Positions 9,611-64,000 of a stretch of 64,000 nucleotides of DNA are shown here, piece by piece. The stretch covers positions 8,804,001 through 8,868,000 of the forward strand of contig NC_087253.1 of assembly GCF_037042905.1 (NCBI RefSeq). The letters are read 5' to 3'. Made by a program: the position numbers and the translations under genes. The notes beneath the pieces are model-generated. The model saw nothing but the letters and a program-made list of their open reading frames with translations. It had not been told where the DNA came from and ran no database searches. Every line of letters starts with the position of its first letter. Within the stretch, counting starts at the first letter, position 1. Origin of the DNA: Lytechinus pictus. Its lineage: Eukaryota.

Positions 9611-10761
9611 ATATTTTACAAGTAACTGACAGATAAGATGGAGCCATTTGTCGAAAACATTGAAAAGAGAGTAGTAAGATCTTGAACTTGATACGTGACC
9701 TGACAGGCAACCAATTCATATCTTTTTGTTCTAGTAACAATCCTAGCAGCCGAGTATTTTTTAATGACCTGAAGTTTCTGGAGTTGAGTGTCTGGTACTC
9801 CATACAATAGACTATTGCAATAGTCTAAGTGGCACATGACAAAAGCATGCACCAGCCTTTCAGAGGTATCTCTATCAACATACGATCGAATTTTCCCAAT
9901 CTTACGCAATGCATATGACGCAGATCGACATTTAGATTTTATGTAATATTGCATAGTGAAGTGATCATCAAATAGGACACCAATATTTATTGCTGTCTTA
10001 ACAGGAACAACCTCTTCACCCTCAATTTCAAAAGGGCGCAAAGGTACATTGGGTCAAAATCGAGATTTTATATGCATAACCTCTGTTTTCCTACTATTCA
10101 ACTTTAGGCCACTCAATCTTGACCACTCTTTAATTTCCTTGATACAACTCTGCACTCTAGCAATCAGATCTTCTATATCCGATGATTCCGATGATTTACA
10201 TGTCATATACATCCGAGTATCGTCTGCATAAAAAACATTCTAGAAAATCCATAAGAATCAATAATATCTTCTAAAGGTGATGTATACATGGTAAAAACTA
10301 AGGGTTCGATAACAGACCCTTGGGGCACACCTTAGGCGGTGCTGCACCATCCCGAGTTTGCTCAATCTCGAGATTTTAGCCCAATCAGCCCTCTTCGCGA
10401 TTAATCTCGAGATTCAAGAAACCCCATCTCCACCATCGCAAGAAGAGCGATTCCTGCTCGAGCGAGGCAACAGGCCGGATATTCCGAGCATGCGCACTTT
10501 CGGATCTTGGAGTTTCAACGGCGCGCGCTTTTGAATAACTTCCCGCGATATGCAATCAATGTACTCCTTTCACTAGCACTTTCGCCGAATTCGACCGGTG
10601 TTATGCAACAATCCTCTCAGCTCAGCCGCGCTCAGCGAGCGAAGAAGTGATGTATTCTTCGTTAAATATGATGGTTTTAATGTCATGGCGGAGAAGGAGG
10701 CAACGACAGAGAGAGAGGAGGAAAGAAATGCTATTTGCCCACATTTTGCGAAGGGGGGGGG

Positions 10762-11160
10762 GGGGTTTACAAACGAACAATCACAATTACTGGAATCTGT
10801 ACAAAAACGAGCAATGCGTATAATCAACACATAATTATCGTATACTGAGGCACTCAAAGAATTAAACTTCGAATTGTTATCCGACCGCAGGAAAATCATG
10901 TGTGAAAAGCAATTCCTCCAATTGCAAAAGTCAGATCATATCTTAAATAACCTCCTTCAATCAAAAGAGTAGAAGTATGATTTTAGGAATAGAAAACAAT
11001 TTCCCTTGCCAACGTGTAAAACAAAGAGGTACAAACAGAGTTTTATCCCCTGGTGTCTGTACAACCTTCAATAACAAGAATAGTCTCTAGCGCATTAGAC
11101 AATGAGTTTGTGTATTACCCAGTTGAAAGGATCGAGCAGTCTCTTGATGTCATACATAAC
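10762..11160 (+). mobile_element. 5'-truncated LINE 3' fragment nested in the Harbinger-like element
   Basis: Reads LESVQKRAMRII..SYTEALKEL...LPTCKTKRYKQSFIP with stops, a typical LINE RT C-terminus. Confidence 0.7.
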
Positions 11161-11203
11161 TTTTTTTATATTTAAATATTGCGTATTCCCAGATTCGTTA
11201 TGC

Positions 11204-11470
11204 TCCCTTCCCCCTTTCCTCCTCTTCTCTCTCTCTCTCTCCTTCTTTTCTTTCTCACCTCCTTCCTTCTCCTTTTTCACCCCTTACTTTTTTCATCCTC
11301 CCCCTCCTCTACTTCCTTTTTTTCAACTTCCTTTTTTCTCTTCTTCCGCTTATCCTTCATGTTCATCTTCTTTTTTTTTCTTCCTTTTCTTCTTCTCCTT
11401 TCTTTTTTCTTTCTCATATTCCTTATTACTTTCTCCCCATCCCTTCCTCCTTCCCATCCGAATTACCTAT
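11204..11470. repeat. Pyrimidine-rich low-complexity tract
   Basis: Almost pure C/T sequence. Confidence 0.85.
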
Positions 11471-13572
11471 TAACTATCCTAATTTATTCTGAGTGATCTG
11501 GTTTGACCATTTATAAAGAAATGCGGTTCAGGTTTTTGCCCCCCCCCCCCCCCCTGTTTCATGTGAGTATTTTTTCAACTTAGAATAGATATTCTTGTTT
11601 TCATTCCCTGCTTATTCTTCATATTCCGTTTTCCTTTTTATGCTGGTTATTTCCCTGTTTGTTTTGGTATTAATGTACACTACCATGACCATCGTCGATA
11701 ATGAGCGCCTCCCCCCATCGGTCTGGTCTCTCCCAAAATCCATTCACTGGTGGGACACCATAGTTGCTGATTGGGGAAACGATGAACGCTATTTGCGATA
11801 AGGTCTATTCGTGTGTATAAAGTGCATGTGTTCGGTACGATCGCGATGTGTTTATGTTTTGACCAAGGCGGAAGTGGAACGCGAATGGCATTATGGACTG
11901 ACGTCATGAATAAATTACCCCGAGTCCAATCTCGAGTGCGTCTGCACCTGCGAATTAGCGGGATAATTCGTAAAATAGCGCGCTATTTTGCAAATAAACC
12001 CGAGTTGACTTGGGATTGCAATCTCGAGATTAATCCTACGAACTAGCGCGATAATTGCGTCTCCATTGCAAACAATCTCGAGATTTTTCAGATCGGGATA
12101 ATTTGCCGGATCAGAAATAGCGCGCTAATTTGAAAACTCGGGATGGTGCAGACGGCCCTCTTTTGTCGGTATATAAGTTGATGTTTGTTCACCATTACAG
12201 ACTGAGTACGAGATGCTAGATATGTGCGAAACCAGTCCAATGCAAGGCCTTGGATTCCATACCAATGTGACATTCTATGCAACGTGATGTCATGGCCAAT
12301 TGCATCGAATTCCGATGAATAGTCCAAAAGGACTAGAAATACTTCATGACCTCTATCCAAGGACATCAGTATATCATTGGAAACACGTAAGAGTGCTGTC
12401 TCACAGCTATGGAAATGTCTGTAAGCTGATTGAGTTCTTGCAAGGAGACGGTGTTCAGACAGGTAATTCCGCAGTTGAATAGCTGCTGCTCTGTCTACTG
12501 TCCTTGCCAGAAACTTAAGATTTGCAATTGGTCGATCATCTCTGTCCAGCTTATGATCTTTGATGAGAGGACATATGTAAGACATCTTTAAGCCATTAGG
12601 AAAACAGCCAGTTCGAAAAGATTCATTAATGATGCACGTAATTATAGGTACAAGCTCATCACAGCATTTGTCCAGTAAGCAAGTTGGAAAGGCCTCAAGA
12701 CTACATGTTGATGTTGTAGAATTTTGATTATATCTGCCACCTGCTTATCTGACTCAGAAATGCCCTCCAGTTTTTCAACAAAAGACTGCATAAAACGTTC
12801 AGGAAGAGAAGTTTCTGAGTCATTGCCCGGCAAAGCCTTTGAAGAATGTGGACAAGAGAGTTTATCAATGTTCTGGAACAATTCACGAGAACTGCAAACA
12901 GACAGCTGGTCTCTGTGATACATTAACTTAGCAGTATCCAGAGCCTTCTTATATTCAGCACATTTAGTCTTGAAAATCTGTCGATGAATTACTTGGCCAG
13001 AATTCGATGATGAGAAACGTTCCAGCCTTCGAAGTTCCTGCTTCGCACGACGGAGCTCATCATTACACCATGGGGAGTTTGGTCGACATCTTACTGTGTG
13101 AGATAGAAGAGGAGCATGTTTGTCCAAGAGAGTACTGAGAACAGATTCATACTGAAGTATCAGATCATCAACACTATCAGCAGGGTTCCAGATACAATTC
13201 AGACTGTCTTAGGTCCTCACGAAACGACTCAACATAAGTTTGACGCAATTTACGCATCTTCACTTCAATATATGACGGTACAGGTTGGCTAATCATCAAG
13301 GTACACTTGCTTCTCATTGGCATGAATTGGTGATGTTAGGAGGATTGTGGTAGGCATGACTAAAATTGGTTTGAAAATCTTGATTGCTATTCATTATTCT
13401 TTCCAGATTAGGCCTATATTCAATAGGCCTATCACCATATGAAAATTTCATGAAAACCATTTCTTGCATAAAAAAAACTTGCGTTGTTTCTTTGTTTTCG
13501 ATTTGTAAATTTAGCTCCGGTTGATGGGTCTTTTAATTTAGTAGATGAATTAATATTGTATGATGTGGTTAT

Positions 13573-19945: not shown

Positions 19946-21477
19946 ATGGGACTACAAGTTCTGTATTGGGTTGCTGCTATTACTCTCCCTATCGTCAATC
20001 GCGACGATGTTTACGGCGATGTACCATTTAAATGACCTTAAAGAGATAAGAGCGAAGAAGAATTCTGCATTGGGCATCCGACAGCTCGAAATGAAAGGAA
20101 TCCTTCATCGTCTGGTTTGGGGGAAGCCTCAATATCCTCGGACAAGAATAGAGGTTCACCTGAGGGAGATGACGCTTTTCGGAATCTCAGTATTATATCA
20201 TTTAGATATGACACACTGTCTGTTCGTAGAAATCTAACTCACAGCATTGCTAATGTAGACGACGATGTTCTGACGTTCGATACATATGACATTTTTAAAC
20301 CACTATCGAATGTAACCAGTGAAGAAAGCAGCTTGGTTCACAAAATCTAACAAAAACAGAGAAACGCTGACTTTAACTGTGTCATCAGGATTGCCAAGTA
20401 TTGTTCCTCTCGTTGTGATTATCTAGTTAAAGGTAAACATTCGAGGGAATGGACGCCATTCAGATGTGAACTCAGTGAGTTCTGCAGGTTTGAGACTCGT
20501 TTTATAGGTAACCTCACCAAGGAGGTTATGAAGACCATCGATGTTGTTTTCTTTATACCCGGATATCGGGATGTTCGTCTGAAGCAAGTGATGGCTGCAA
20601 GACCACCAGGACAACTCTAGGTCCTCTGCGCCAAAGAGAGTCCTCAGCATGACCCAGATTATGCTCCTCGAGGTCTAACAGGAAACCCTTTCAATCTCAC
20701 CATGACGTATGTCAGGGACAGTGACATTTACTTCCCATACGCCACCGTGCGGAAGCTTGGGAAGCCAAATGAACATCCGCCAGATATTCCAAAGAAAACC
20801 AAGCTGATAGCTTGGATGGCATCCAACTGCAATCCATATTATTGGAAACGAACTGAACTAGTGAAAGCGATTCAAGGGAATATCTCAGTGGATATGTACG
20901 GCAAGTGCGGTACGGGAAGACTTGCCCATGATAAAACCATGGAGACCCTCAAGCAATATAAATTCTATATCGCGTTTGAAAATAGCGAATGCCGGGATTA
21001 CATCACGGAGAAGGTGTGGAAAAATTGCCTTTTACAGGGAATCGTACCCATCGTCTACGGATCAACGCGCGAAGGCTACGAGAAGTCACTCCCAAGGAAT
21101 TCCTTCATCTCCGTAGAGGATTTCAGTAACATGAGCGAATTTGTAGATTACATTCACGCACTGGATAAAGACGACGCGCGTTACATGAAATATTTCGACT
21201 GGAGGAGGGACGGCGCAGTGCAGTTTCACTCTCCATCTGCGTTCAGAGGTAGCAGACCGGAACTGAATTTCTGTTACCTCGTCAAAAAACTACTCCACGT
21301 CTTCGTACATCCAGAGAACACTTGGCAGAAAAGAAATCCAGATTTTGCATCTTGGTGGCGAGGGCAATGTGCCGATTATTCTATTAAGAAAATCGTTCTG
21401 GGATTCAATACCCATCGGTCAAGAGAAGAAAGGCAATCATCAATGCATCTAAGAGACGTGGTGACATAGAAATGTAG
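19946..21477 (+). pseudogene. Alpha-1,3-fucosyltransferase pseudogene (paralog of 7000..8559)
   Basis: 8-nt and 22-nt deletions near the 5' end; CAA->TAA at 20348; TGG->TAG at 20618; 1-nt deletion near 21430. The catalytic-half ORF 20702..21469 is still open. Confidence 0.92.
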
Positions 21478-44910: not shown

Positions 44911-46567
44911 AGCCCCTTTCACAATTGACGTACGACCATTTGCGACCTTTTGGTCGTGCGACAGGCTGCAACAGGCATCAATCGCTAGTCATCTCATAAG
45001 ATCGCACAGAGGCTTTCACAGTTGCAACAGCTGTCGTACAACAAAACAACCAGTAAACCCCGATGCACGAGTAAGTCGCATATACTCTTATTGTGCTCGT
45101 GCGATCACATGCGAGTGTTGCACGAGGGATTGCGAGTGGAACGGTCGCATACATGCGAATGAAACGGTAGTGCAATGTTGTAAGCCGTTGCGATCGGTCT
45201 TGCAACAGTCTTATGGCCCATATTATTATCGCAACCAGTCGCAAGACAGGTCTCTGTACATGTAGGTCGCTTGCACATGTGCAAGTGTTGCACGACCTCC
45301 AGTCAAGTAAATGCGACTACTTAGTTGTGCCACCTCTCGCACCAAGTCGTACAACGTTGAAAGACACTCGCACGATGATCGCCCGACCGATGGTACGACC
45401 CCGGGTACGGTCTGATGCGAGTGAATCGATCGTATTTGATCGTGTTCGGATTTTGAACATGTTCAAAGTTCAGATGTGACCAGTCACGACCACCTCGAGT
45501 TCGTGCGACCGTCTACAACGACTGCGAGTGCTCGCAAGACACCAAGAGATCGATCGTGCAACAACAAGAAAAAACTGTTGCAGGCAGTCGTAAACTGGTC
45601 GGACGTCAATTGTGAAAGGGGCTGAACGGTCGCATACATGCGAATGCAACGGTAGTGGAATGTAGTAAGCCGTAATTTCGATCGGTCTTGCAACAGTCTC
45701 ATATTATCGCACCCAGTCGCAAGACTGGTCTCTGTAGGTCTCCAGCACATGTGCAAGTGTTGTACGACCTCCAGTCGACTAAATGCGACTATACTTAGTT
45801 GTGCCACCTCTCGCACCAAGTCGTACAACGTTGAACAACACTCACACGATGATCGCCCGACCGATGGTACGACCTGTTGCGAGTGAATCAATCGTATTTG
45901 ATCGCGTTTGGATTTTGAACATGTTCAAAGTTCAGATGCGACCAGTCACGATCACCTCCGACCACCTCGAGTTTGTGCGATCGTCTACAACGACTGCGAG
46001 TGCTCGCAAGACACCATGGGATCGATCGTGCAACAACAAGAAAAAACTGTTGCAGGTGGTCGTAAACAGGTCGTACGTCAATTGTGAAAGGGGCTGAACG
46101 GTCGCATACATGCGAATGCAACGGTAGTGGAATGTAGTAAGCCGTAATTTCGATCGGTCTTGCAACAGTCTCATATTATCGCACCCAGTCGCAAGACTGG
46201 TCTCTGTAGGTCTCCAGCACATGTGCAAGTGTTGTACGACCTCCAGTCGACTAAATGCGACTATACTTAGTTGTGCCACCTCTCGCACCAAGTCGTACAA
46301 CGTTGAACAACACTCACACGATGATCGCCCGACCGATGGTACGACCTGTTGCGAGTGAATCAATCGTATTTGATCGCGTTTGGATTTTGAACATGTTCAA
46401 AGTTCAGATGCGACCAGTCACGATCACCTCCGACCACCTCGAGTTTGTGCGATCGTCTACAACGACTGCGAGTGCTCGCAAGACACCATGGGATCGATCG
46501 TGCAACAACAAGAAAAAACTGTTGCAGGTGGTCGTAAACAGGTCGTACGTCAATTGTGAAAGGGGCT
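44911..46567. mobile_element. PIF/Harbinger-like MITE with two extra tandem 472-bp right-end copies
   Basis: TIR AGCCCCTTTCACAATTGACGT; right ends at 45623, 46095 and 46567; flanks TAA / TTA. Confidence 0.8.
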
Positions 46568-47116: not shown

Positions 47117-48153
47117 CACTCGGCAAAAAAAGTTCTTGGACACTTATAAAAGTTAAGATATTCCATATAGATATTTGATTAAAGGTAAATTATTGTATGT
47201 CAACATGACCAGACAATATTCCTCTTCCAGTATGACATGACATTTTCATGTGAACAGTCATGCATTAATGGTTAAACGCTTTAAACAATAGCAATGTCAG
47301 AAAAAGAAAATTCCAAGAAATGCTCAGTCAGTGCATGGCTGGTTACAGGCATTGAACAATAGCAATGTCAGTAAAAGAAAATTGCAAGAAGACGATCAGT
47401 CATTCTTTCAGTTGTGATAGTTTGTGTGGCATTAATATCCATTAAACGATAAAAGCAAACTTAAAGTCAAATACCACTCTAAAAGTAAAGAGAAAGCTAT
47501 CCACCTTGGATGCATCACTATTCCACTGGAATTTTAAGTCAAAGTCAGTCGATTAAAAAAATGTCAAATTTCAGTATCTTGGCATAAGCAAAAGAAAAGT
47601 ATCCTTATCCTCCTATCTTCTGCAGGGGTGGTGGCCCTAGGTCGAACACTCCTAGGGCGGTCTGTAACTTCATCAGTCGCCAAATACCGCTGGTTCAAAT
47701 TTAAAATTGGTGAAACCTGGAAATATCGAGCCACTTGTCTAAATGACTGCCCAGACTGCAACATTCCTATTGCTCTTGCACGCTCTTGGTTGGAAAGCTT
47801 CATCTTGAAAGTGAATGTCCAAAGGATCCATCTCATTATGCATCTCATGATGCATCCCTAAGCATTTAATTCAAATAATAACTACCTGTTGAAGTTGTTG
47901 AATGTATGCCTACAGGATGGCCATGATCATTAGCATTTGAATGGTCCATTTCTTGCAATTTTCTTTTACTGACATTGCTATTGTTTAAAGCATTTAATCA
48001 CCCATTCATGACTGTTCACATGAAAATGTCATGTCATAATGGAAGAGGAATATTGTTTGGTCATGTTGACATACAATAATTTGCCTTTAATCAAATATCT
48101 ATATGGAATATTTAAACTTTTATAAGTGTCCAATAATTTTTTTTTGCCGAGTG
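47117..48153 (-). mobile_element. Internally deleted Tc1-like transposon with long TIRs and a transposase N-terminal (HTH) remnant
   Basis: TA|CACTCGGCAAAAAA ... TTTTTTGCCGAGTG|TA; ORF 47564..47848 contains ERARAIGMLQSG..RQVARYF...DRPRS.RPRATT..EDRRI. Confidence 0.9.
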
Positions 48154-48256: not shown

Positions 48257-48800
48257 ATGGCTGAGAAGGACACCAAGAAGGCTCCTAAGAAGAAACCAGT
48301 GACCCATTGAAGGAGCGGAATGGATCTTCGCTCCAGGCAATCAAGAAGTACATCGAGCAGAACTTCGATGTCCAGATGGACCGACAGCTCATTTTCATCA
48401 AGAGGGCTCTGAAGGCTGGTGTGGTGAAGGGCAAACTTACGCAGACAAAGGGTGAAGGTGCTCCGGGGTCATTCAGATTTAATGTGCAAGCAGCCAAGGC
48501 ACAACCAGCGGAGAAGGCCAAGAAGGAGAAAGAGGGCCAAACAGCAAGCACAGCGGGAGAAGGCAAAGGCGAAATCTGCAGCCCAGAAGGAGAAGAAGAA
48601 GAAGGCAGCCGCTAAGAAGGCAAAGGCAGCACCAAAGAAAGTGAAGAAGCCTGCAAAGAAGACTAAGACCACTGAGAAGAAAGAAAAGAAAAAGACACCA
48701 AAGAAGAAAGTCCCTGCCAAGAAGTCGACACCCAAGAAGGCGACAAAGAAGGCAGTAACCAAGAAGCCAAAGGCTTCGAACCCCAAGAAACCCCAAGAAA
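48257..48800 (+). pseudogene. H1: Histone H1 (early-embryonic sea-urchin type) orphon pseudogene
   Basis: [17 protein letters not shown] / [51 protein letters not shown] globular domain and K/A/P-rich tail; frameshifting deletion near 48307, a second frameshift near 48530, 3'-truncated. Confidence 0.92.
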
Positions 48801-49629
48801 AAATATATATATTTACAAAATCTAGAAATTATTGCAACTTTCACGATTGTTGTGAGACCTACCCCTGGGACCACTTATTTCACAGTTACTAGGATACAGA
48901 TGGGGGTTGCATTGCATCCAAAAGTTCAATGACTGAAATAAAGAAAAAATAGAAAAATATCACAAAGGAAATGGAAGGGAAAGGGTAAAATGTAATATCA
49001 TTTTTTTTTCTTTGTTACGTTAGATTTCGTTTTTAAGATTGTATGCATTTTTTCTTGCATGCTCCACTAGCTCGCGGCAATTTTTTGAGGGTGTTTTGTT
49101 TTGTTTTGTTTTTACCCGTACGCCATGTACTGCCCCTCTCTTTTTTTCTCATTATGCGACGATTAACAGCTCTGGACTTAATCATTGACGAACAGGACAT
49201 TATGACATGTTTATTGAATTCGTATATTTTTCAAGATGGGTTAAATAGAGTAAATAACAAAACTATCATTAATCAACCTCAATCGCGAAGGGAATGCTTC
49301 TTGGGTGATAGTACATGTTGCACGAAGAATACAATTATTCACGCCATCTACGTCAGTCTCGATTGTGAAAAAAGTTTCTGAAGCATAACTCACATTGTCT
49401 GAATAAAAACTTGAATGATTTATTATGAAAAATCAAGTGACGAATACTTATCTATAGTGTGATGCCATGGGATCGCTGATGTTAGCACGTAAATTTGTGC
49501 TACGATACGGAAGGGGGCAAATTAAGAGCATCGCGCCCTCTCTCTCCCTTGTTATCTCTTTTAATCACACACACTAATAAGCCCTCACATGCGCATCTTC
49601 ACACACCCTTACACACACACACACACACA

Positions 49630-50888: not shown

Positions 50889-51272
50889 ATGAAACCAAAG
50901 AAGCGACAAAGGGTGACACCCAACGTTGTGGCATCAAAATGGATCCAAGGAAAAAAAGACCAGGATCATTTTGAATGCCATTACTTTGGCCCATTAAAAG
51001 GTTTGTGTTTTAAATTATTTGTGTAATTCCATTCTAAACTGAATATTTCATTCAAATTGATACACACCATAGACTTTCAGTGTAATGTACAGTTACACAG
51101 GTGTATATAGTTCTAGCCCAACTATTAATAGAGGTGCCATGCTTTACAGAGTAGAACTTTACTTTAATTGCATTGTAGGCCGCCTAAATGCTTTTGTCCT
51201 CTTTTAGTCCGTTCCTTGCATTCTTTTCCCTTTACCTTCCTTTTCAGAATAGTATAGGGAAGGGAGGGGAAG

Positions 51273-51313
<41 letters not shown>

Positions 51314-53910
51314 ATCGTGTTCGTACTTAATGCACGATCGAGTCATCCACTCACTTTTTTTTTTATTTGCTTACAGATAAAAATTACTAACAATCTGAAA
51401 ATCAGTTTTGTTTTCACTTTTTATGTGCTTTTAGTGTTTGCCGATTGATGTGTATGGCAACATGTTTCAGTCACCAATGCACCAAAATCTAAAAGTCAGT
51501 ATGGTAGTTCATACACTCATCTTCCCCCCCCCCCCCCCAAAAAAAAAAAAAATATATATATATATATATAACAACAACAAAAAGTGGCCATTTTGTTTTT
51601 TTAACTCTAATTTTTGTTATAAGACTCTAATATTAGGTAATGAACAATATACCTAAGGGAAATTATTCCTCTTTCAGATGAGCATATATTAAGTCGTCAT
51701 CCATGCATAATGAGTTACAGTCCAATAACCATGCAAATGTGTAAAAACAAAAATATTGAATTATTCACGAACATGATATTTTGCTTGGTGATTTTGACTA
51801 ATACCATACACCATATGTTTTGATGCCTATCTAATGTAGGCATTTGGGGGGAGCATGCTGGCATGGGTATTGGACTCATCCATAGGCGATCAAAAATTAA
51901 AATTCTGCTCATCTGATTGTTTATCAAAAAATCTTTTAGGTTGAACAAGTGGCAACTTCCCTTTTTTATCTGAGTGTAATTATAGTTATTTATATAATTT
52001 CAGACTTGGAGGGAATATACAAGCTAAACATTTACATTAAGGGGAATCTGCTATAAAAGGGATTTTCCAATTCCTTTTCACATTTTAATAGTGTGTTTTG
52101 TCCAGTTGGATTGGTTAGGAATAGGCAGTTAATTCACAGGTTTTAGTTGGCAAAACAAAAATTCATAATTCAGCTATTGTATCTATACTGCCTAAAATAT
52201 TTTCAGAAAGTACTGCAATGACAAAGGACATTCTTCTTTAACCTTGAATATGTCTATAAGGGGGTTGGGGCAGGGGCTGGCATGGAAAGGGATAGGAAAA
52301 ATGTTATAGATGTTAATTGTGCCTTCAAGTAAAGTGTTTTTAATTCAATCAGTCTTTATTAATAGTTACAATTTTCTATTTCCTCCACTCTACATTACCC
52401 CCCCCCCAATTTTGCAGGAAGAGGAGTAGTTGTGACACGCGATATACAAAAAGATGAGTTTCTCTTACAGTATGCTGGAAATCTGATAAATGGCACCGAT
52501 GGAGAGAACCTTGAAATTCAGAATGCTACTGGTTTTAGATTCTTCTTTGCTGCTAAAAATGGCACAAAGATGTGGTAAGGACATCTTTAGCAAGTCCATG
52601 TATGCCTTTAAAGAAAAATATAAAACTAAAACTGAAAAACTAAACAGAAAATAGAAAGAGTGCATATATACCTCCGGCTAGGAAGAGTGCTTACTGGAGC
52701 ATGTCACAGTGTCTGTCACAATGAAAATACGCGCCTCACATTATAAGTGTACTGTACATTCACTTATTTTCATTGGACGCTAAAGGGAAATGCCCTTGGC
52801 TCTTCCATCCCTGGGGTCCATACCCCCTGGAAATTGCACATTTTTACCCCTGTGACCTTTGACCTCATGACGCCCCAAATTTTAGTATTTGTTGTGAGTT
52901 TCATCATGCACCTCTCCTGAAAGTTTGATTAAATTCTGACAAGAACTTTTTGAGTTATGCAAAACAATGAATCAACAGGACTGAAAAACAAAAATTCTTC
53001 CAAGTTCCTTGGCGGAGGTATTAACACATAATTATTCAGTGTGAAAATGAACATTATGTTCCCTAGCTCTGCTTATCTTGCATTGGATTGAGTAGTATGC
53101 TTTATTAGTATATGTAACTACATGTGTCTTGAAAGATCATTGTGTTTGTGCCGATTCTTTATTCTTTATTTCTTTCTGGTGAAAAGTTATTAGATTATAA
53201 GCTCAAGAAAAATTGAAAATTTCGGACAGCATGTTGTGAAAAATATACAATTATATGGTGTACAAATATATTGTGTGGAGATTCAAACAATTATCATTTT
53301 TTTGTCTAATTCTTCGGCAACTGTGAATTATTTTCAGATTGACATGTTTTTTAACTGCCTGTGGGAGAAAAAAAAAACTCACATTTGTTTTGCACGACAA
53401 CATGCAGCTAAACACATGACAAATTGCTCTATCTGTTGTATAATATTGTTGTAAAATGAAGTTTAGATGGATCAGTATACAGCCAGGCATACGACCATTA
53501 AAAATGTAGTTTGATTAGAAGGTATCCATGACAGACTGTCACAATTTAATTGACTGTCCGGGCCTGCGGGTGGTTTATTATAACACTATAGTCTATGGGG
53601 TAAAATGATTGTATTTACAATGACTTTCATTGTTCACACCATACCACAAACACTCTTTCAGTATGTTACATACTCTGATTGTAATGCCTTCTTACTTTTC
53701 AGCATTGATGCAACCGATGAGCCAACTGGTGGGCCAAAGCTCGGGAGATTGGTCAATCATGGCGTAGGAAAATCATCAAATGTTAAACTCCGTGTTGTAG
53801 AAGATGAAGGCACCCCTTTCTTATGTTTGTTTGCATCCAAGGACATTGAAGCACAAACCGAACTCCTGTGTGACTATGGAGTGCCATTGCAATTCAATCA
53901 GGATGAAACG
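50889..53910 (+). CDS. PR-Set7/SETD8-like SET domain over three exons (50889-51000, 52418-52574, 53703-53910)
   Basis: Spliced: MKPKKRQRVTP...GPLKG|RGVVVTRDIQKDEFLLQYAGNLI...FRFFF...C|IDATDE....KLGRLVNHG...N...LCLFASKDIEAQTELLCDYG; phases 1/1 and 2/2 fit exactly. Confidence 0.85.
52650..53022 (-). mobile_element. Helentron-associated (HINE-like) non-autonomous element in an intron
   Basis: Sub-terminal inverted TACCTCCG.C.AGGAA motifs, GACCTTTGACC core, T-rich ends. Confidence 0.5.
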
Positions 53911-54325
53911 GTGAGCTCTAGCTAGCTATTTCGTTATTTTTTAAAGATGCTCTGAACGAACATTCGATAGGTATGAATATAAATAAATACTTAAATATGA
54001 ATGCTTTTTTCCCCTTCAATTTGATAAATGCTTGCGTTTTGAAGAAGACAGTGCAGATGACAACTCAGACACAATGGTTATTAGTTAATGGAGGCGTTTG
54101 CATTCATAAACTTTCTCCGACATAGACAGTGATTATGATAATAAACTCATACTTGCCATCCGATTGCTCATCAAACAGCAGTACCGGGACAAATAAAGAT
54201 AGTCAATTAAAAGACACATGTCAAGGACTACCAGAACTTGTCACTTTCTCTCCTTTCCCACCTTCATGTTTTCAGATGATTTCCAATTACTAATTTTCTC
54301 CCATTATTTTGTTTTTTATTTGTAG

Positions 54326-56405
54326 GTGTGATATATCCTCCCACCAGAAATCGATCTGATGCTGAACAGATACTCCCTGAATCAGGACCACCTACTGGTT
54401 TGAGTAAAGGTGTGATAAATCCTCCCACCAGCAATCGATCTGATGCTGAACAGATACTCCCTGATGATGAACAGCCACTCCTAGAAGCAAGACCACCTGC
54501 TGATTTGACTAAAGGTGTGATATGTCCTCTTATCAGCAATCGATCTGATGCTGAACAGATAATCCCTGAATCAGGACCACCTGCTGATTTGAGTAGAGGT
54601 GTGATCTATCCTCCCACCGGTAATCGATCTGATGCTGAACAGATACTCCCTGAATCAGGAACACCTGCTGATTTGAGTAATGGTGTGATATATCCTCCCA
54701 CATGCAATCGAACTGGTGCTGAAAAGATACTCCTTGAATCAGGACCACCTGCTGATTTGAGTAAAGGTGTGGTAAATCCTCCCACCGGCAATCAATTTGA
54801 TGATGAACAGCCACCCCCTAAAGCAAAACCACCTGCTGGTTTGAGTAAAGGTGTGATATGTCGTCCCACCGGCAATCAATCTGATCATAAACAGCTACTC
54901 CCTGAATCAAGACCACCAGCTGATTTGAGAAAAGGTGTGATATATCCTCCCAACAGCGATCAAGCTGATGATGAACAGCCTCTCACTGAAGCAAGACCTC
55001 CTGCTGATTTGAGTGAAGGTGTGATTTATCCTCCCACCAGTAATCGATCTGATGCTGAACAGATACATCCTGATGATGAACAGCCACTCCTAGAAGCAAG
55101 ATCACCTGCTGATTTGACTAAAGGTGTGATATGTCCTCCCACCGGCAATCAATTTGATGATAAACAGCTACTCCCTGAATCAAGACTACCAGCTGATTTG
55201 AGAAAAGGTGTAATATATCCTCCCAACAGCGATCAAGCTGATGATGAACAGCCACTGCCTGAAGCAAGACCACCTGCTGATTTGAGAAAAGATGTGATAT
55301 ATCCTCCCACCGGTAATCGACCTACACGTAATGATGAACAGCCACTTCCTGAGGCAAGACCACCAGCTGATTTGAGTGAAGGTGTGATTTATCCTCCCAC
55401 AAGTAATCGATCTGATGCTGAACAGATACTCCCTGAATCAGAACCACCTGCTGATTTGAGTAAACGTGTGATAAATCCTCCCACCAGCAATCGATCTGAT
55501 GCTGAACAGATACTCCCTGATGATGAACAGCCACTCCTAGAAGCAAGACCACCTGCTGAATTGATTAAAGGTGTGATATATCCTCCCACCAGAAATCGAT
55601 CTGATGCTGAACAGATACTCCCTGAATCAGAACCACCTGCTGATTTGAGTAAACGTGTGATAAATCCTCCCACCAGCAATCGATCTGATGCTGAACAGAT
55701 AATCCCTGATGATGAACAGCCACTCCTAGAAGCAAGACCACCTGCTGATTTGACTAAAGGTGTGATATGTCCTCTCATCAGCAATCGATCTGATGCTGAA
55801 CAGATAATCCCTGAATCAGGACCACCTGCTGATTTGAGTAGAGGTGTGATCTATCCTCCCACCGGTAATCGATCTGATGTTGAACAGATACTCCTTGAAT
55901 CAGGACCACCTGCTGATTGGAGTAATGGTGTGATATATCCTCCCACTTGCAATCGAACTGGTGCTGAACAGATATTCCTTGAATCAGGACCACCTGCTGG
56001 TTTGAGTAAAGGTGTGATATGTCGTCCCACCGGCAATCAATCTGATGATGAACAGCTTCTCCCTGAAGCAAGACCACCAGCTGATTTGAGAAAAGGTGTG
56101 ATATATCCTCCCACCAGTAATCGATCTGATGAACAGGCACTTCCTCAGACAAGACCACCTGCTGACTTGAGTAAAGATGTGGTATATCCTCCCACCTGCA
56201 ATCAATCTGATGATGATGAACAGCCTCTCACTGAAGCAAGACCTCCTGCTGATTTGAGAAAAGGTGTGATATATCCTCCCACCAGCACTCGAGCTGATGA
56301 TGAACAGCCACTTCCTGAAGCAAGGCCCTCTGCTGATTTGAGAAAAGGTGTGATATATCGTCCCACCAGCAATCGATCTGATGATAAACATCTCCTCGCT
56401 GAATC
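54326..56405 (+). repeat. Coding minisatellite, 24 units mostly of 84 or 105 nt (GVIYPPTSNRSDAEQILPESGPPADLSK)
   Basis: Units counted in the 974-aa ORF; no stops or frameshifts. Confidence 0.92.
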
Positions 56406-56729
56406 GCAACCATTGGGACAACCCACTGCATCGTTATCTTTGATTACAGATGTTGTTGTAGATAGCTTCGAAGAAGACGGTAGTGATGACGACTCAGACA
56501 CAATGGTTGTTGTTAAAAGGAGGCGTTTGCATTCACAAACTTTCTCTGACATAGACAGTGATGATGATCCCTCATACGTGCCGTCTGATTGCTCACCAAA
56601 CAGGAGTGATAGTGATACTTTTCCTGTACCCGATGAAATGGAGACGGGCAATGAAGAGCCAAATGTCAAGACACAAGTCACATCTTCAAAATCAGCACAA
56701 TGCTCTGAAGAAAAAGAAAGGAAACAGCC

Positions 56730-58270
56730 ATATAAGAAGCCCTATCGCTTTTGCATGTACTGCAAGAAACATATGTCAAAACTCTCAGATCACTTAAAAA
56801 ATAAACACCGCAATGAAGAAAGAATACAATATGCACTCGGTTTACCTACAAAGGAGCGAATTGAAGAATTTGATAGAATCAGAAAAGAAGGGACCTTTGA
56901 AGTTAACAAAATCAGAGCAAAAGATGACAATCCACAATTTCAAAGAGAAAGGTCAAGCGCATCCAATTCTGTTGTAATATGTAGCAACTGTTCAGGGGCT
57001 TACTCTGCTCCATACATGAGAAGGCATAAGCATCATTGTGAATACAAGTCTGATTCCTCCAAGCCTTCAATGCACATTCCAGCATCATTTCTTTCAGTTA
57101 TGAATGATTCAGATTCGTCATTTATTTCTGAAATTCTCAGCAAGTTCAGAAAAGATGAAGTTGGCCAACTTTGTCAAAGCGATCCCATACTTCGGGAAAT
57201 AGGAAAAAGGCTGTGGTTAAAGCAGAACAAGAAGCCTGACAAAAAAACTTAAGTACGGAAGTCGGTCATGACTGACATGCGAAGACTTGCCAGACTTTAC
57301 CTAACCCTGATCTCAGTGCAGGATAATCTTGGGCCTCTTCTTGTAAAGGCAGGAAATGTATCTGACCTGATGCAACGCTCCAACTTCCAGCACCTAGAAG
57401 TAGCAGTGCAGCAGTACACTGAGAGGAGAGAAGAAAGTGAAGGCTTGGGTGTCAAAGCAGGTTTGAAGTTAGGAGTATTCTACCTCCTGACATATTTACT
57501 GCTGTTCTTGATCTTCAACACAATCAAATATTTGGCGATGCTACATATCATCTAAACAAAAGGAGGGAAGAAAAGTTACGAAGACCGAGTGGGCAGCCAT
57601 TGGAAGCTGACATTAAGGCAGTTAGAGATTACACAACCTCAAGAATCACAGAGCTACTTGAAGATACCCTGGCATTCTGGGATAGGCATCGTTTTGTTGA
57701 ATTGAGAGACTGCCTCGTATCACGACTCACATTGTTCAATGCCCGGAGAGGGGGAGAGCCTAGCCGTTTATATATCAAGTGCTGGCAAGACGCAAAGGAA
57801 GGAGCATGGCTGGACAAGCAACAGCTGGCCACATTAGACTCCATAGACAAAGCCCTTGTCGAGGATTTAAAGGTTGGGTACCAGTTGGGAAAGGGAAAGC
57901 ATTTAATCCCTGTGCTTTTTCCCACAGACACCCATGAGGCATTGGACAAGTTGATTAACAAAGAAATTCGATCGTGTGCAGGAATAGGAAACGACAACAA
58001 CTACCTATTCCCAACAACCAGTGGTTCCAATTCCAATGTATCCGGATGGCATGCCTTGGACAACATATGTGAGTGTGTAACCCTCGATGATAAGCAGTCA
58101 ATCACAGCAACTAAAAATAGACACCGTGTGAGTGTACTCTTTGCACTTTCACATATTCCAGAAAGAGAGAGATCTTTCATCTTTAAACATCTAGGACACT
58201 CACAGGAAACAAACGAAAATATCTATCAGGCACCCCTGGCACTCAAAGAAGTTAATGATGGATACAGGAG
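56730..58270 (+). pseudogene. Zinc-finger + tyrosine recombinase (integrase-type) coding region with a stop and frameshifts
   Basis: CMYC..H....H and CSNC..H...C fingers; RLTLFNARRGGEP (R), GKGK (K), ITATKNRH, HLGHSQETNENIY (H, catalytic Y at 58224). Confidence 0.82.
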
Positions 58271-61039
58271 GTGAGCTGCATTCTAGTATATCAAGTTCAA
58301 TGTATACAAGTTTGCTGGAGAAGAGCAGTATACCTAGGATGATGTCAAACAAATACTTTTATTTTTGGGATATGAAAAAGCAGTGCAAAAATTTTCCTGC
58401 TACACGAGTCCACATGAAATATTTCAAACAAAGCAAATTATGAATTATGTGATATATTGTATATGTCATGACAATCTCTCAATGTAATTTTATCGTATGA
58501 TATGCCTACTTTCCATGAATGCACTTGTAGGCCTACAACTAAAAAAAGAAATACACTCTACAGAGCTTTGTTCACAAACAAAAACAAATTTAAACAAATA
58601 TAAACTGTTCTATCAACTCAAGATAAACTCATGGATGGAGGAGGGGGGGGGCTGGGAGTAAAGTCAGTGTTTTTATTGTCTTGAATAATGCAGGTCATTT
58701 ATAGATTCATAATCATTTTCCCCCAGTTTTCATGTAAGTCGGTCACTCTGTATGTGTTTCTTTTTTCCCGTTCTTTACGAACATGCTGTAGATATAATGG
58801 ATCCTGCGACCAGCAGTGAACAAGTGAAGCCTCAAGTGAAGCCATCAGGTACCATATAGATTTCATGTATATATAATTGAATTGCCTATCAAAAATGAAT
58901 TTATATGAGACAGATTTGTTTGTCATCTTATCATGTTATACAGCTGCTCTTTATTACGAGCAGGAATAGTTGAGTTTGAAGGATAATTTCCTGATAAAAA
59001 ATATTGATAGTCACCATGCAGTGTCTTAATTTACTACCAAAGGCATTACAAAAGCATATTAATAGATAATAGTATTCACTGCTAGCATCAAAGAAAGAAT
59101 TGATAATGTATACAGTGCTTGATTTTTTAAATTGTTTTTAGCTAAATCTTACTTATTAGATGCAGGTATTCGAATATTCACTTCACTTGCATTTTGTTTT
59201 TTCAAACTTTATTATTCAACAATCTCATTTCATTAATTAATTACCTATAAATGTAAATATGGTTACAAACTTTCAAGAGAAATTCTAAAGTGTCTGGTGA
59301 ACAGATTGAATCATCTGTATTCCACTTTTTGCTATATTTCAAAAATTTCATTTGCCAATATGAAATATGAAAATGAAGTTTCCACACAAACCCATAAAAG
59401 TTATATATAAAATGCAGAAAAAAGCAGAGTCAATCAATATTCAAAACCAAATTTTATCGAGATCCAACTTTTTAATGGTAGTATTAAATTTATTTGTCTC
59501 CCTATCTCTCTCTCTCCATCTCTCTCCCTCCCTCTGTCTTCCCTCTCTCTTTGGTTGTGAAGGTCGTAACTATACACAATGGCGGAAATCTGATGAAAAG
59601 GAGCTGTTGGCACATTTCAAAGAATATATCAATGGAGAAGCAACAAAGAAGCTTCCGGGTATGTTACCATATTAGATAGTATATGCCACTTTGCAGAGAA
59701 ATGTAAGGTTTTGAGAGAAAAAGGGAACAATATTTCCAACAACTTAGTAGTATATTTCAATATAGATTTTTATGAAAATTTTGTGTTATATTCCTTGACA
59801 GATAAATAGATATTTGTCAAGGTGAATCTCCCAATGAATTTGTCTATATCACTTTAAAAATCCTATCCTTATCCATAATTATTTTGTACCCTGTATGGTG
59901 TAAGGTATTCAATTAGTAAATTTCAGGATCTTCCACTGGGTATTTTGTCTGCATGCATAAAAGTTATGAATTACAACAGCTTAGAATTTCTTATAACAAT
60001 CATCCATCAAATGAGCCTCATATTGCACATACACTTACAGATAATCCATATATCAAATTCACTTATCTTATCAAATTGCCTGTGACGCTTATTACTCACA
60101 TACAAAAAAAAATTCTTAGAACTTTTCCTTTTATGAATCAAAACAAAGTCAGCTTTATAATATAAATGCTTTTTTTTTTTAGGTAATCTTTTGAATTCAA
60201 CCCAAATAAAGACAATATTCAATAAATAGAAGATTAAAAGCTTGCCAATTGTGGGAGCATAAAATGGAGAAGAGTTCAATTTTGATTTGGGCATTTCTCT
60301 GATCACTTGGAGTACCTTTAACAGCCAAAACATTATCTTGTATGTCCCATTCATTAAAACGAACTTTAAGTTTTCTTTGTTGCACTATTTTCTTTTTCTT
60401 CTTCTTCTTTGGTTGGTTTTGTTTGGCAATTAGTCACAATTGACTGTTTTGGGCCCTCAAATTGCAAAGTCTTCGCTAAATTATGCTTTTTATCACCCAA
60501 CATAAACGAAAGGCTTGTTGATAATTTATTACGGCTTGCCTGTTCATGCAAATGAGATGTCAAAGTGTTTGCCAAGGTATAATATTTGCTTGATCCAGGT
60601 AAGTGGGCAAGTGGGTTTGTAGAAAAACTGTGTGTAATAAATAACCACTTTTGACAGTGTAAAGCATGTCACCTCTTCATAAAGAATATTGAGTTACAAC
60701 CTCACTATAAGAGTAAACTCCTTGAACTATATGTTGTTGTTCACAAACAAGATTGAGGGTAACAAAGTTGCAAGATACACCTTTGCCTGACAAGATGACA
60801 CAGTAATGTATTATTTCAGGCAAATGCGGGAGTTTACAATGTCTCTCATTTCTCCAACATATTTATATCCCCTTTCATATATACAGGAAGGAAGGAAATC
60901 ATTATATTCCTGAAAGCACACCCATCGTTTCCTCACCCTTGGCAGACAGTGCGCAAAAAAATGATGAATGTAGTGTACAACAAAAACAAAAGATTCCCTA
61001 AAGTAGTGTAACGGGCCAAAACAGGAATTTTCATTTCAT

Positions 61040-63925: not shown

Positions 63926-64000
63926 TTTGGAATATTAACTTATTATCTAGGGTCATTTTTATCAATCTTTCTGTATTCTGCTGTAAATTCTTGTGTTACA

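What the first reader, a model, noticed from the sequence alone, without database searches (positions are those of the whole stretch)
50889..61011. Spliced gene that appears to fuse a PR-Set7-like histone methyltransferase to a tyrosine recombinase (SET-repeat-ZnF-YR-Myb)
Seen: exons missed by the ORF track splice into a complete SET domain (GRGV / QYAG / IDAT / GRLVNH / ELLCDYG). A giant exon follows on the same strand with repeats, an acidic stretch, two Zn-finger-like motifs and the R-K-(H)xxR-H-Y pattern. Small phase-1 exons then encode a W..E..L..F..YI..LPG.KEI..FL..HP..W..VR helical tail. Established: this residue pattern defines tyrosine recombinases; RT-less eukaryotic YR elements are Crypton-type DNA transposons; the SET motifs are closest in style to the SETD8/PR-Set7 H4K20 methyltransferases. 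Inference: a mobile element that carries its own chromatin writer fused to its integrase, perhaps marking its integration site or excised circle. Similar uncharacterised animal gene models may exist in databases; I know of no functional study. The SET-to-YR join is inferred, because exon 3->4 is out of phase in this copy.
Basis: partly seen in the sequence, partly recalled or inferred. Interest (0 to 1): 0.85.

Follow-up and report, generated by a model that had tools for sequence, protein, structure and literature searches.

The report
Histone-methyltransferase-carrying tyrosine-recombinase transposon, dead copy
This sea-urchin locus is a broken copy of a little-known jumping gene whose single protein joins a histone-methylating (SETD8-like) domain to the DNA-cutting recombinase that moves the element, and intact, recently mobile relatives exist in sea urchins, molluscs and other animals.

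Summary
Window 50889-61011 (+) of Lytechinus pictus encodes three in-phase exons that make a complete KMT5A/SETD8-like SET domain. A 3.9-kb exon follows with 28-aa tandem repeats, an acidic stretch, two zinc fingers and a tyrosine recombinase (YR). Two phase-1 exons then encode a three-helix tail.

The SET-YR join is real. In relatives the second half of SET and the YR lie in one uninterrupted ORF (S. purpuratus, two metagenome contigs).

The YR model (pLDDT 93) matches only integrases and type IB topoisomerases.

The family is mobile. S. purpuratus has four 99.6-99.9% identical copies on three scaffolds. Two share one internal deletion. All are bounded by (TA)n and an imperfect terminal inverted repeat. 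A mussel element has the same (TA)n borders and a similar left end.

SET-YR fusions occur in echinoderms, a hemichordate, molluscs and one fish.

The window copy is dead: an in-frame stop (57250), two frameshifting deletions (57489, 58253/4) and an out-of-phase exon 3-4 join. Its ends were not found.

It is best filed as a new variant of YR-only (Crypton-class) DNA transposons. It has no DUF3504 signature, and I found no description in the literature. What the SET domain does is untested.

The parts
50889..51000 (+). Exon 1: start codon, basic N-terminus and the region before SET (MKPKKRQRV...GPLK, plus 1 nt). Ends in phase 1.
   Evidence: Sequence and splice signals. Aligns with the N-termini of P0002, P0247 and others. 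S. purpuratus gene A has an intron at the same position, LK|GRG.
52418..52574 (+). Exon 2: first half of SET (GRGVVV...QYAGNL...FRFFF...). Phase 1 in, phase 2 out.
   Evidence: Pfam SET at 19 bits, splice signals and alignment A5.
53703..53910 (+). Exon 3: second half of SET (C-IDAT, GRLVNHG, ELLCDYG). Ends in phase 0 at GTGAGC. It has Cys where relatives have Tyr in ELL-Y-DYG.
   Evidence: Pfam SET at 33.4 bits. Top structures are KMT5A/SETD8, E 9e-8. Alignment A5.
54038..54182 (+). Decayed duplicate, with stops, of the start of the acidic segment. It lies inside intron 3.
   Evidence: 83% identical to window 56467-56607. Also seen by tblastn.
54326..58270 (+). Giant exon: repeats, acidic stretch, two zinc fingers and the YR. 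It starts in phase 1, out of phase with exon 3. Its donor is GTGAGC at 58271.
   Evidence: ORF 54280-57249 and its continuations. 99% identical to P0001 and 50-70% identical to P0002 and P0003.
54356..56403 (+). Tandem array with an 84-nt period, about 24 units, encoding Pro/acidic-rich 28-aa repeats.
   Evidence: Tandem Repeats Finder. Relatives carry unrelated repeats at the same place.
56467..56643 (+). Acidic, Ser/Asp-rich stretch.
   Evidence: Translation. Conserved in position in relatives.
56743..56808 (+). Zinc-finger-like motif 1 (C-x2-C...H-x4-H).
   Evidence: The Cys and His residues are nearly invariant in 46 relatives. Weak Pfam zinc-finger hits.
56974..57039 (+). Zinc-finger-like motif 2 (C-x2-C...H-x3-C).
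   Evidence: Nearly invariant Cys and His columns.
57250..57252 (+). Lesion 1: in-frame TAA where intact relatives have Glu.
57187..58253 (+). Tyrosine recombinase: helical core-binding part and catalytic domain. Landmarks are ARRGGE at 57726-57770, GKGK at 57879-57920, TKNRHR at 58104-58133 and HLGHS..NIY at 58182-58229.
   Evidence: AF2 model of the intact paralogue, pLDDT 93. Foldseek top hits are XerH, Cre, Tn1549 Int, lambda Int and topoisomerase IB. Conserved columns.
57489..57489 (+). Lesion 2: deletion of about 70 nt (23 residues, KSSSK...ADQI, of the intact paralogue) with a frameshift.
   Evidence: The two tblastn matches abut at 57489 in different frames. Sequence.
58253..58254 (+). 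Lesion 3: deletion of about 23 nt (the TVVGRQPQ of the intact paralogue) with a frameshift.
59563..59658 (+). Tail exon A (RNYTQW...KKLPG). Phase 1 in and out.
   Evidence: Splice signals and alignment A4.
60887..61011 (+). Tail exon B (RKEIIIFL...VRKKMMNVVYNK...) and the stop codon.
   Evidence: Three-helix model with homeodomain-like matches.

Best explanation
The locus is a degenerate copy of a DNA transposon whose only gene encodes one long protein. The order of its parts is: a KMT5A/SETD8-like SET domain, a lineage-specific tandem-repeat linker, an acidic stretch, two zinc fingers, a tyrosine recombinase and a homeodomain-like three-helix tail.

Shown:
- The domain identities and the physical fusion.
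- Relatives in S. purpuratus and a mussel are discrete units of 22.5 to about 34 kb present at several unrelated sites.
- Those units are bounded on both sides by (TA)n.
- Their left ends are alike across phyla, and the urchin element has an imperfect terminal inverted repeat (the GGGAGACA motif about 20 nt inside each end). The mussel's right end (GGGGACA) was compared by eye only.
- The urchin arms hold no other ORF.

Inferred mechanism:
- The YR, guided by its zinc fingers and/or tail, binds the inverted terminal motifs.
- It excises the element as a circle whose junction is right arm, (TA)n, left arm.
- It reinserts the circle by strand exchange inside a genomic TA run. That would leave TA repeats at both ends, as proposed for Cryptons and as Tn916/Tn1549-type integrases do in AT-rich targets.
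- The tethered SET domain would methylate a lysine close to the recombination complex. H4K20 is the most likely target by similarity to KMT5A. A KMT5A non-histone substrate in DNA-damage signalling is the alternative.
- Why the element needs this (access to chromatin, repair or ligation, or self-silencing) is unknown.

The window copy cannot make a recombinase. It has a stop, two frameshifts and an out-of-phase SET join.
For: SET domain:
- Pfam and structure matches.
- Motifs kept across lineages that are only 30-45% identical.

YR:
- Fold.
- PF00589 in 26 of 105 relatives.
- Nearly invariant R, K, R-H, H and Y columns.

Fusion in one ORF. Two intron positions are shared with S. purpuratus gene A.

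Mobility:
- Four S. purpuratus copies, with one deletion shared by two of them.
- Exact ends with (TA)n and a terminal inverted repeat.
- Mussel copies with (TA)n borders and a left end matching the urchin's at 20 of 30 positions, by my reading of the two sequences.
- Multi-locus clusters above 90% identity.
- No other ORF in the urchin arms.

Window lesions.
Against: - No (TA)n or TIR-like termini were found around the window copy, so its own status as a bounded element is not shown.
- Its nearest full-length relative, S. purpuratus gene B, also shows no such ends within 10 kb.
- I cannot tell whether P0001 is a second locus or an intact allele of this locus.
- The first His of the canonical H-x-x-R motif is Thr family-wide.
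- Many relatives have N-D instead of N-H in the SET cofactor motif, and the window copy has Cys for the Tyr in ELL-Y-DYG.
- No transcript, circle or enzymatic data exist.
Confidence: 0.78

Rival explanations
1. It is a domesticated cellular gene family. SET-YR would be a host chromatin or recombination factor, and the extra copies would come from ordinary segmental duplication, so the window holds a pseudogenised paralogue.
For: - The architecture and two intron positions are conserved across deep lineages.
- Copy number per genome is low.
- Two diverged SET-YR genes sit in tandem in S. purpuratus.
- No ends were found for the window copy.
Against: - The duplicated unit has the same exact ends at three unrelated sites.
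- An internally deleted derivative was copied again.
- There are nine dispersed loci in a mussel.
- The terminal sequence is conserved across phyla.
- The L. pictus, S. purpuratus and Diadema proteins are about equally distant from one another, contrary to orthology.
- Coding DNA is only 63% identical to S. purpuratus gene B.
Confidence: 0.1
2. The 22-34 kb units are moved by some other, unlinked transposase, for example a DDE enzyme that uses the terminal inverted repeats and a TA target. The SET-YR gene would be cargo.
For: Terminal inverted repeats plus flanking TA are typical of cut-and-paste elements. Classical animal Cryptons have no terminal repeats (PMC3212892).
Against: - No other ORF of 90 aa or more with a family match lies inside the urchin element.
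- The flanks are long, variable TA runs, not a 2-bp duplication.
- The same kind of ends travels with the same YR family in an urchin and a mussel.
- The YR catalytic residues are under family-wide conservation.
Confidence: 0.07
3. The fusion is an artefact of gene models: an ordinary KMT5A-like gene happens to lie next to a YR element.
For: Several database models lack the SET part (P0001, P0165, P0008). The exon 3 to 4 join is out of phase in the window.
Against: - The second half of SET and the YR lie in one continuous ORF in three independent sequences.
- The same order and strand recur in four phyla.
- SET-less models share identical YR sequence with SET-bearing ones (P0008 and P0160).
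Confidence: 0.03

Closest known systems
Crypton DNA transposons (YR-only eukaryotic transposons; Goodwin 2003; Kojima & Jurka 2011, PMC3212892)
   Same: - A tyrosine recombinase is the only enzyme, with no reverse transcriptase.
- Introns lie within the element gene.
- Copy number is low.
- Short direct repeats at both ends (here TA runs) are taken as the crossover substrate.
- Some Cryptons carry accessory domains, such as the C48 peptidase also seen here in the Ostrea relative.
   Different: - No DUF3504 (CryptonA) signature in any of 105 relatives.
- Animal Cryptons were described as lacking terminal repeats and C-terminal domains. These elements have imperfect terminal inverted repeats, subterminal copies of the motif, two zinc fingers, a helix-turn-helix tail and an N-terminal SET domain.
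- They are 22-34 kb long.
KMT5A / SETD8 / PR-Set7 (H4K20 monomethyltransferase)
   Same: It is the best sequence match of the SET domain by far: E 1e-16 against 1e-9 for the next human family, KMT2 (a SET protein of unnamed family, 4ldg, lies between at 1e-12). The C-flank PW(R/L)K is included. A genuine arthropod KMT5A came up in the same search.
   Different: - The domain sits at the N-terminus of a recombinase instead of the C-terminus of a cell-cycle-regulated enzyme.
- Many copies have N-D for N-H.
- The substrate is unknown.
SETMAR / Metnase (SET fused to a mariner transposase in anthropoid primates)
   Same: A SET methyltransferase and a transposase sit on one polypeptide.
   Different: - SETMAR is an immobile, domesticated single-copy host gene. 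It formed when a transposon landed next to a host SET gene (my own knowledge).
- Its transposase is of the DDE type and its SET belongs to another subfamily.
- Here the fusion is the transposon's own gene and the copies move.
Tn916/Tn1549-type conjugative-transposon integrases and Cre/Xer/lambda Int
   Same: They share the two-domain YR fold. Excision to a circle and insertion into AT-rich targets with little sequence requirement is the working analogy (my own knowledge).
   Different: They are bacterial, show no detectable sequence similarity and have no chromatin-modifying domain.
DIRS/Ngaro/PAT retrotransposons and fungal Starships
   Same: They are eukaryotic mobile elements that use a YR. 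DIRS elements often carry a methyltransferase-like domain (PMC13465315). Starships are large.
   Different: DIRS-type elements have a reverse transcriptase. Starship captains are DUF3435 proteins and carry cargo genes. Here there is no reverse transcriptase and no cargo ORF.

Membership tests
Tyrosine recombinase superfamily | Two-domain integrase fold (helical core-binding domain plus catalytic domain) | tested here: met
   The AF2 model of the 99%-identical intact paralogue has pLDDT 93. Foldseek top hits are almost all YRs or topoisomerase IB: probability 1.00 for the top 7, best E 8.5e-4, TM 0.57 to the S. aureus integrase 3nkh. The viral library gives the same picture.
Tyrosine recombinase superfamily | Catalytic residues R...K...H-x-x-R...H/W...Y with canonical spacing | tested here: inconclusive
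   R (ARRGGE), K in the beta-hairpin turn (GKGK), R-H (TKNRHR), LGHS and Y nine residues later are nearly invariant. The first His of H-x-x-R is Thr in the whole family. No residue-level superposition was possible.
Tyrosine recombinase superfamily | Sequence match to Pfam Phage_integrase (PF00589) | tested here: inconclusive
   The window piece and P0001 give no hit. 26 of 105 relatives hit at E up to 0.1, best 1.8e-6.
Crypton (YR-only DNA transposon) | The YR is the only enzyme: no reverse transcriptase and no other transposase in the element | tested here: met
   The S. purpuratus element has one gene, and no ORF with a family match lies in its 5.9-kb and 5.7-kb arms. The reverse-transcriptase ORFs in the window are distant LINE pieces.
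Crypton (YR-only DNA transposon) | Several dispersed copies with common, exact ends | tested here: met
   Met for relatives: S. purpuratus loci L002, L004 and L005 (plus L003), and the mussel loci L008 and L009. Not met for the window copy itself, whose ends were not found.
Crypton (YR-only DNA transposon) | Short terminal direct repeats and no terminal inverted repeats | tested here: not met
   TA runs at both ends fit the direct-repeat part. Imperfect terminal inverted repeats of about 26 nt, and subterminal copies of them, are present.
CryptonA group | YR recognisable as DUF3504 (PF12012) | tested here: not met
   None of 105 relatives hits DUF3504 at E up to 0.1, nor does the window piece at E up to 1.
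Crypton (YR-only DNA transposon) | Circular excision intermediate | not testable with these tools
   Needs outward PCR or long reads from animals with intact copies.
KMT5A/SETD8-type SET methyltransferase | SET domain with cofactor and catalytic motifs (GxG, Y in EY.G, NH, ELxYDY) | tested here: met
   Pfam SET and the motifs in the spliced exons. Deviations: Cys for the first Tyr of YDY in the window, and N-D for N-H in many relatives.
KMT5A/SETD8-type SET methyltransferase | Closer to KMT5A than to other SET subfamilies | tested here: met
   The top 14 PDB sequences are all KMT5A/SETD8 for P0003 (E 1.4e-16; next human family 1.5e-9) and for window exon 3.
KMT5A/SETD8-type SET methyltransferase | H4K20 monomethylation activity | not testable with these tools
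   Needs an enzyme assay on nucleosomes or peptides.
Myb/SANT or homeodomain-like DNA-binding domain (tail) | Three-helix helix-turn-helix fold with a family signature | tested here: inconclusive
   The AF2 model (pLDDT 83) has three helices. The best Foldseek matches are homeodomains and one Myb domain, TM 0.55-0.70, but E is 0.9 or higher. No Pfam family matches.

The most novel reading that the evidence does not exclude
This would be a transposase that writes a histone mark. The KMT5A-like domain, tethered to the recombinase by a long disordered repeat linker, would methylate H4K20 (or a KMT5A non-histone substrate in DNA-damage signalling) at the synapse, the excised circle or the new insertion. 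That activity would be required for, or would tune, YR-mediated movement into TA microsatellites in chromatin. If so, this is an ancient, still active superfamily of animal DNA transposons, found in echinoderms, hemichordates, molluscs and fish, that manipulates host chromatin directly.
Probability: 0.3. Interest if true: 0.9.

Novelty: new variant of a known kind. Interest (0 to 1): 0.72.

Why it matters
Mobile elements are known to read chromatin (chromodomain integrases), and some carry DNA methyltransferases. A transposon whose own recombinase is fused to a histone-lysine methyltransferase has not, as far as I could find, been described.

The family is widespread. It is recently active in a laboratory model, S. 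purpuratus. It has simple, defined ends and a simple target, TA microsatellites.

That makes several questions directly testable:
- How does a tyrosine recombinase work on chromatin?
- Does a transposon-encoded histone mark help integration, repair or self-silencing?
- Where did the many uncharacterised 'SET domain-containing' genes of invertebrate genomes come from?

A chromatin-aware, TA-run-targeting recombinase could also interest tool builders.

Tried and rejected
- I did not build a spliced or lesion-repaired protein from the window. The tools take no read-through, so I used the pieces and the natural intact relatives (P0001, P0003) instead.
- Pfam on the window YR piece gave nothing. 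A family profile against PDB sequences gave nothing either. Only fold comparison and weak PF00589 hits in relatives show the YR.
- The locus of P0001 is not on record, so no second L. pictus copy could be aligned.
- Searches of the window found no element ends. I looked for the urchin terminal motif, for TA runs, for the cross-phylum terminal pattern and for inverted repeats.
- DNA comparison of the window with the S. purpuratus loci shows only 63% coding similarity and no conserved flanks.
- A tree of 113 YR domains could not say whether SET was gained once. SET-bearing rows are scattered (16 changes for 19 rows), but many SET-less rows are truncated models.
- Five full-text literature searches found no paper on a SET-YR element.
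- I considered (TA)9 at 51553 as a possible left end and rejected it. It lies in intron 1 between homologous exons and has no terminal motif.
Full report
**Source and observation**

The window is from Lytechinus pictus. The giant ORF is 99% identical to nr protein LOC129267799 (P0001).

- Exons 1-3 are 50889-51000, 52418-52574 and 53703-53910. They join in phase (1, then 2) and give a complete SET domain.
- The codon split across exons 2 and 3 encodes the Cys of C-IDAT, as in SETD8.
- Pfam SET hits exons 2 and 3 (19 and 33.4 bits).
- The best solved structures for exon 3 are all KMT5A/SETD8 (E 9e-8). The same holds for the intact S. purpuratus relative (E 1.4e-16, next human family (KMT2) 1.5e-9).
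- Exon 3 ends in phase 0 at GTGAGC and exon 4 begins in phase 1 after TTTGTAG.
- Intron 3 holds a decayed 83% copy (54038-54182) of the sequence that follows the repeat array. This region has therefore been rearranged.

**The giant exon and the tail**

The giant exon (54326-58270) contains, in order:

- an 84-nt tandem array at 54356-56403;
- an acidic stretch;
- two zinc-finger-like motifs whose Cys and His residues are nearly invariant in relatives;
- the recombinase.

Compared with P0001, the window has three lesions:

- TAA at 57250-57252, where P0001 has Glu;
- a roughly 70-nt deletion at 57489 that removes 23 residues and shifts the frame;
- a roughly 23-nt deletion at 58253/4 that shifts the frame again.

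The exon ends in phase 1. So do both ends of tail exon A (59563-59658) and the start of tail exon B (60887-61011). The two tail exons align with a C-terminal domain found throughout the family.

**Is the recombinase real?**

- The window piece hits no Pfam family.
- A profile of 105 relatives hits no PDB sequence.
- An AlphaFold2 model of the intact paralogue (P0001:230-612, 105-sequence alignment) has pLDDT 93 and pTM 0.85.
- Its Foldseek matches in the PDB are almost all tyrosine recombinases or type IB topoisomerases: XerH, an S. aureus integrase, Tn1549 Int, XerA, Cre, XerD, lambda Int and IntI. Probability is 1.00 for the first seven and the best E is 8.5e-4.
- The viral library gives phage integrases, VLF-1 and giant-virus YRs.
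- 26 of 105 relatives hit PF00589 weakly. None hits DUF3504.
- Nearly invariant columns give R (ARRGGE), K (GKGK, in a hairpin), R-H (TKNRHR) and LGHS, with Y nine residues later. That last spacing equals XerD's, from my own knowledge.
- The first His of H-x-x-R is Thr throughout the family.

**Is the fusion real?**

- A full-length relative, S. purpuratus LOC105437092 (P0003, 1531 aa), has SET, repeats, acidic stretch, zinc fingers, YR and tail.
- Its residues 101-1362, from C-IDAY of SET to the end of the YR, lie in one exon (L001 14453-18238).
- Two metagenome contigs carry single ORFs that translate directly to proteins holding the last SET segment and the YR: L006 6204-9938 and L007 5367-10472.
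- S. purpuratus gene A (P0247) has introns at the same two SET positions as the window. It also has an intron between SET and the repeat exon.
- SET always sits at the N-terminus.

**Distribution**

- The YR piece finds 2013 clusters at E of 1e-3 or better and 252 at 1e-30 or better.
- SET-YR proteins occur in these groups:
  - sea urchins (S. purpuratus, three or more genes; Diadema; L. pictus);
  - a crinoid;
  - sea cucumbers;
  - a hemichordate, where a kinase domain is also present;
  - gastropods and bivalves (Haliotis, Magallana, Saccostrea, Ostrea with a C48 peptidase, Sinanodonta, Mercenaria, Mytilus, Solemya); a Ruditapes protein has the same SET type, but no YR was detected in it;
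  - one teleost.
- Relatives in which no SET was detected (zinc fingers, YR and tail) occur in Hydractinia and Styela; Hydra and Clytia relatives also show no SET.
- On a YR tree the SET-bearing rows are scattered. Several SET-less rows are truncated models of SET-bearing genes.
- SET motifs are kept between lineages that are only 30-45% identical.

**Mobility**

In S. purpuratus, gene A lies in a unit of about 22.5 kb.

- L002 and L003, on different scaffolds, are 99.9% identical over at least 17.4 kb.
- L004 and L005, at two sites on a third scaffold, match L002 from about 4100 to 26664. Both lack the same 6.2-kb internal segment: the rest of the repeats, the zinc fingers, the YR and the tail. 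A deletion derivative has therefore been copied again.
- At all three sites similarity starts and stops at the same bases:
  - left: flank, (TA)n, TTAGCGTGGATGGTACCTTTGGGAGACA...
  - right: ...TGTCTCCCAAAGGTCCCATGCAAAGT, (TA)n, flank.
- The two ends form an imperfect inverted repeat. Copies of the terminal motif recur in the right arm.
- The arms hold no other ORF of note.

In the mussel Sinanodonta:

- Nine loci on at least five chromosomes share more than 90% protein identity.
- Two copies are 96-98% identical over about 33.7 kb and are again bounded by (TA)n.
- The left end, TTAGTCCGAACGATACCATCCGGAGACAAA, matches the urchin's at 20 of 30 positions by my reading.
- TA runs are very common in that genome, which weakens the flank argument there.

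**The window copy**

- No comparable ends were found. The right end may lie beyond base 64000.
- S. purpuratus gene B, its nearest full-length relative, also shows none within 10 kb. It shares only 63% coding DNA identity with the window.
- The L. pictus, S. purpuratus and Diadema proteins are about equally distant from one another. This argues against simple orthology.
- I cannot tell whether P0001 is a second locus or an intact allele of this locus.

**The tail**

The tail is a three-helix domain (pLDDT 83). Its best structural matches are homeodomains and one Myb domain (TM 0.55-0.70), but E is 0.9 or higher. No Pfam family matches. 'Homeodomain-like, probably DNA-binding' is as far as the evidence goes.

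**Interpretation**

- The best reading is a dead copy of a YR-only DNA transposon of the Crypton class in the broad sense.
- It departs from described Cryptons in five ways (PMC3212892): a KMT5A-like SET domain fused to the recombinase; two zinc fingers and a helix-turn-helix tail; terminal inverted repeats; TA-microsatellite borders; and large size.
- Strand exchange within TA runs and a circular intermediate are inferred by analogy.
- The role of SET is inferred from similarity only.
- Five literature searches found no description of such an element. Repbase itself could not be consulted.

Noticed in passing
window:54038-54182: A decayed copy (83% identical, with stops) of window 56467-56607, the start of the acidic segment after the repeats. 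It lies in intron 3. This suggests that the repeat array and its flank arose by internal duplication, and it may explain the out-of-phase exon 3 to 4 join.
   Followed up: partly
L002:4095-26665 (S. purpuratus AAGJ06000007.1), L004, L005, L003: The SET-YR element is about 22.5 kb long and is flanked by (TA)n on both sides. It has an imperfect terminal inverted repeat of about 26 nt, and the terminal motif is repeated in the right arm (L002 25048, 25421, 26358). Two copies share one 6.2-kb internal deletion.
   Followed up: yes
L008:8663-42389 and L009:8677-41800 (Sinanodonta woodiana): The mussel SET-YR element is about 34 kb long and is also bounded by (TA)n. Its left end resembles the sea-urchin left end (20 of 30 positions). 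A tyrosine-phosphatase gene model is annotated inside the shared region of L009 but not L008.
   Followed up: partly
L002:26640-28339 / L001: The right end of S. purpuratus element A lies only 1.7 kb upstream of a second, diverged SET-YR gene (LOC105437092). Either elements insert next to each other or this is an old tandem pair.
   Followed up: no
L003:2904-8984: A Ty3/gypsy retrotransposon (RT, RNase H, integrase) is inserted in the left arm of the second full-length S. purpuratus copy.
   Followed up: partly
proteins P0290, P0236, P0292, P0291: Variant architectures exist: Ptychodera flava has SET, protein kinase, YR and tail (2049 aa); Ostrea edulis has C48 peptidase, SET and YR; Mytilus has SET, collagen repeats and YR. 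A SET-YR protein also occurs in the teleost Brachyhypopomus gauderio.
   Followed up: partly
window:54356-56403 and relatives: Every lineage has a different tandem repeat between SET and the acidic stretch: 28 aa in the window and 27, 16, 14, about 10 and about 62 aa elsewhere. The position is conserved but the sequence is not.
   Followed up: no
window:29471-41237: Four identical 203-aa Thr/Ser-rich (mucin-like) ORFs lie on the - strand, spaced 3635, 3635 and 3833 nt apart. This is either a very young tandem duplication or an assembly artefact.
   Followed up: no
window:7000-8559 and 20702-21469: An intronless GT10 fucosyltransferase ORF (519 aa) and a partial second copy.
   Followed up: partly
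window:278-4734 and 9616-13127: Pieces of non-LTR retrotransposons (reverse transcriptase, endonuclease, zf-RVT), unrelated to the finding.
   Followed up: partly
window:44908-48144: A 27-31-nt motif (TAAAGCCCCTTTCACAATTGACGTACGACC) recurs in both orientations, with duplicated ORFs at 45484-46363. A 198-nt inverted-repeat pair lies at 47125-47322 and 47947-48144. A Lys-rich ORF at 48452-48892 has no family match.
   Followed up: no
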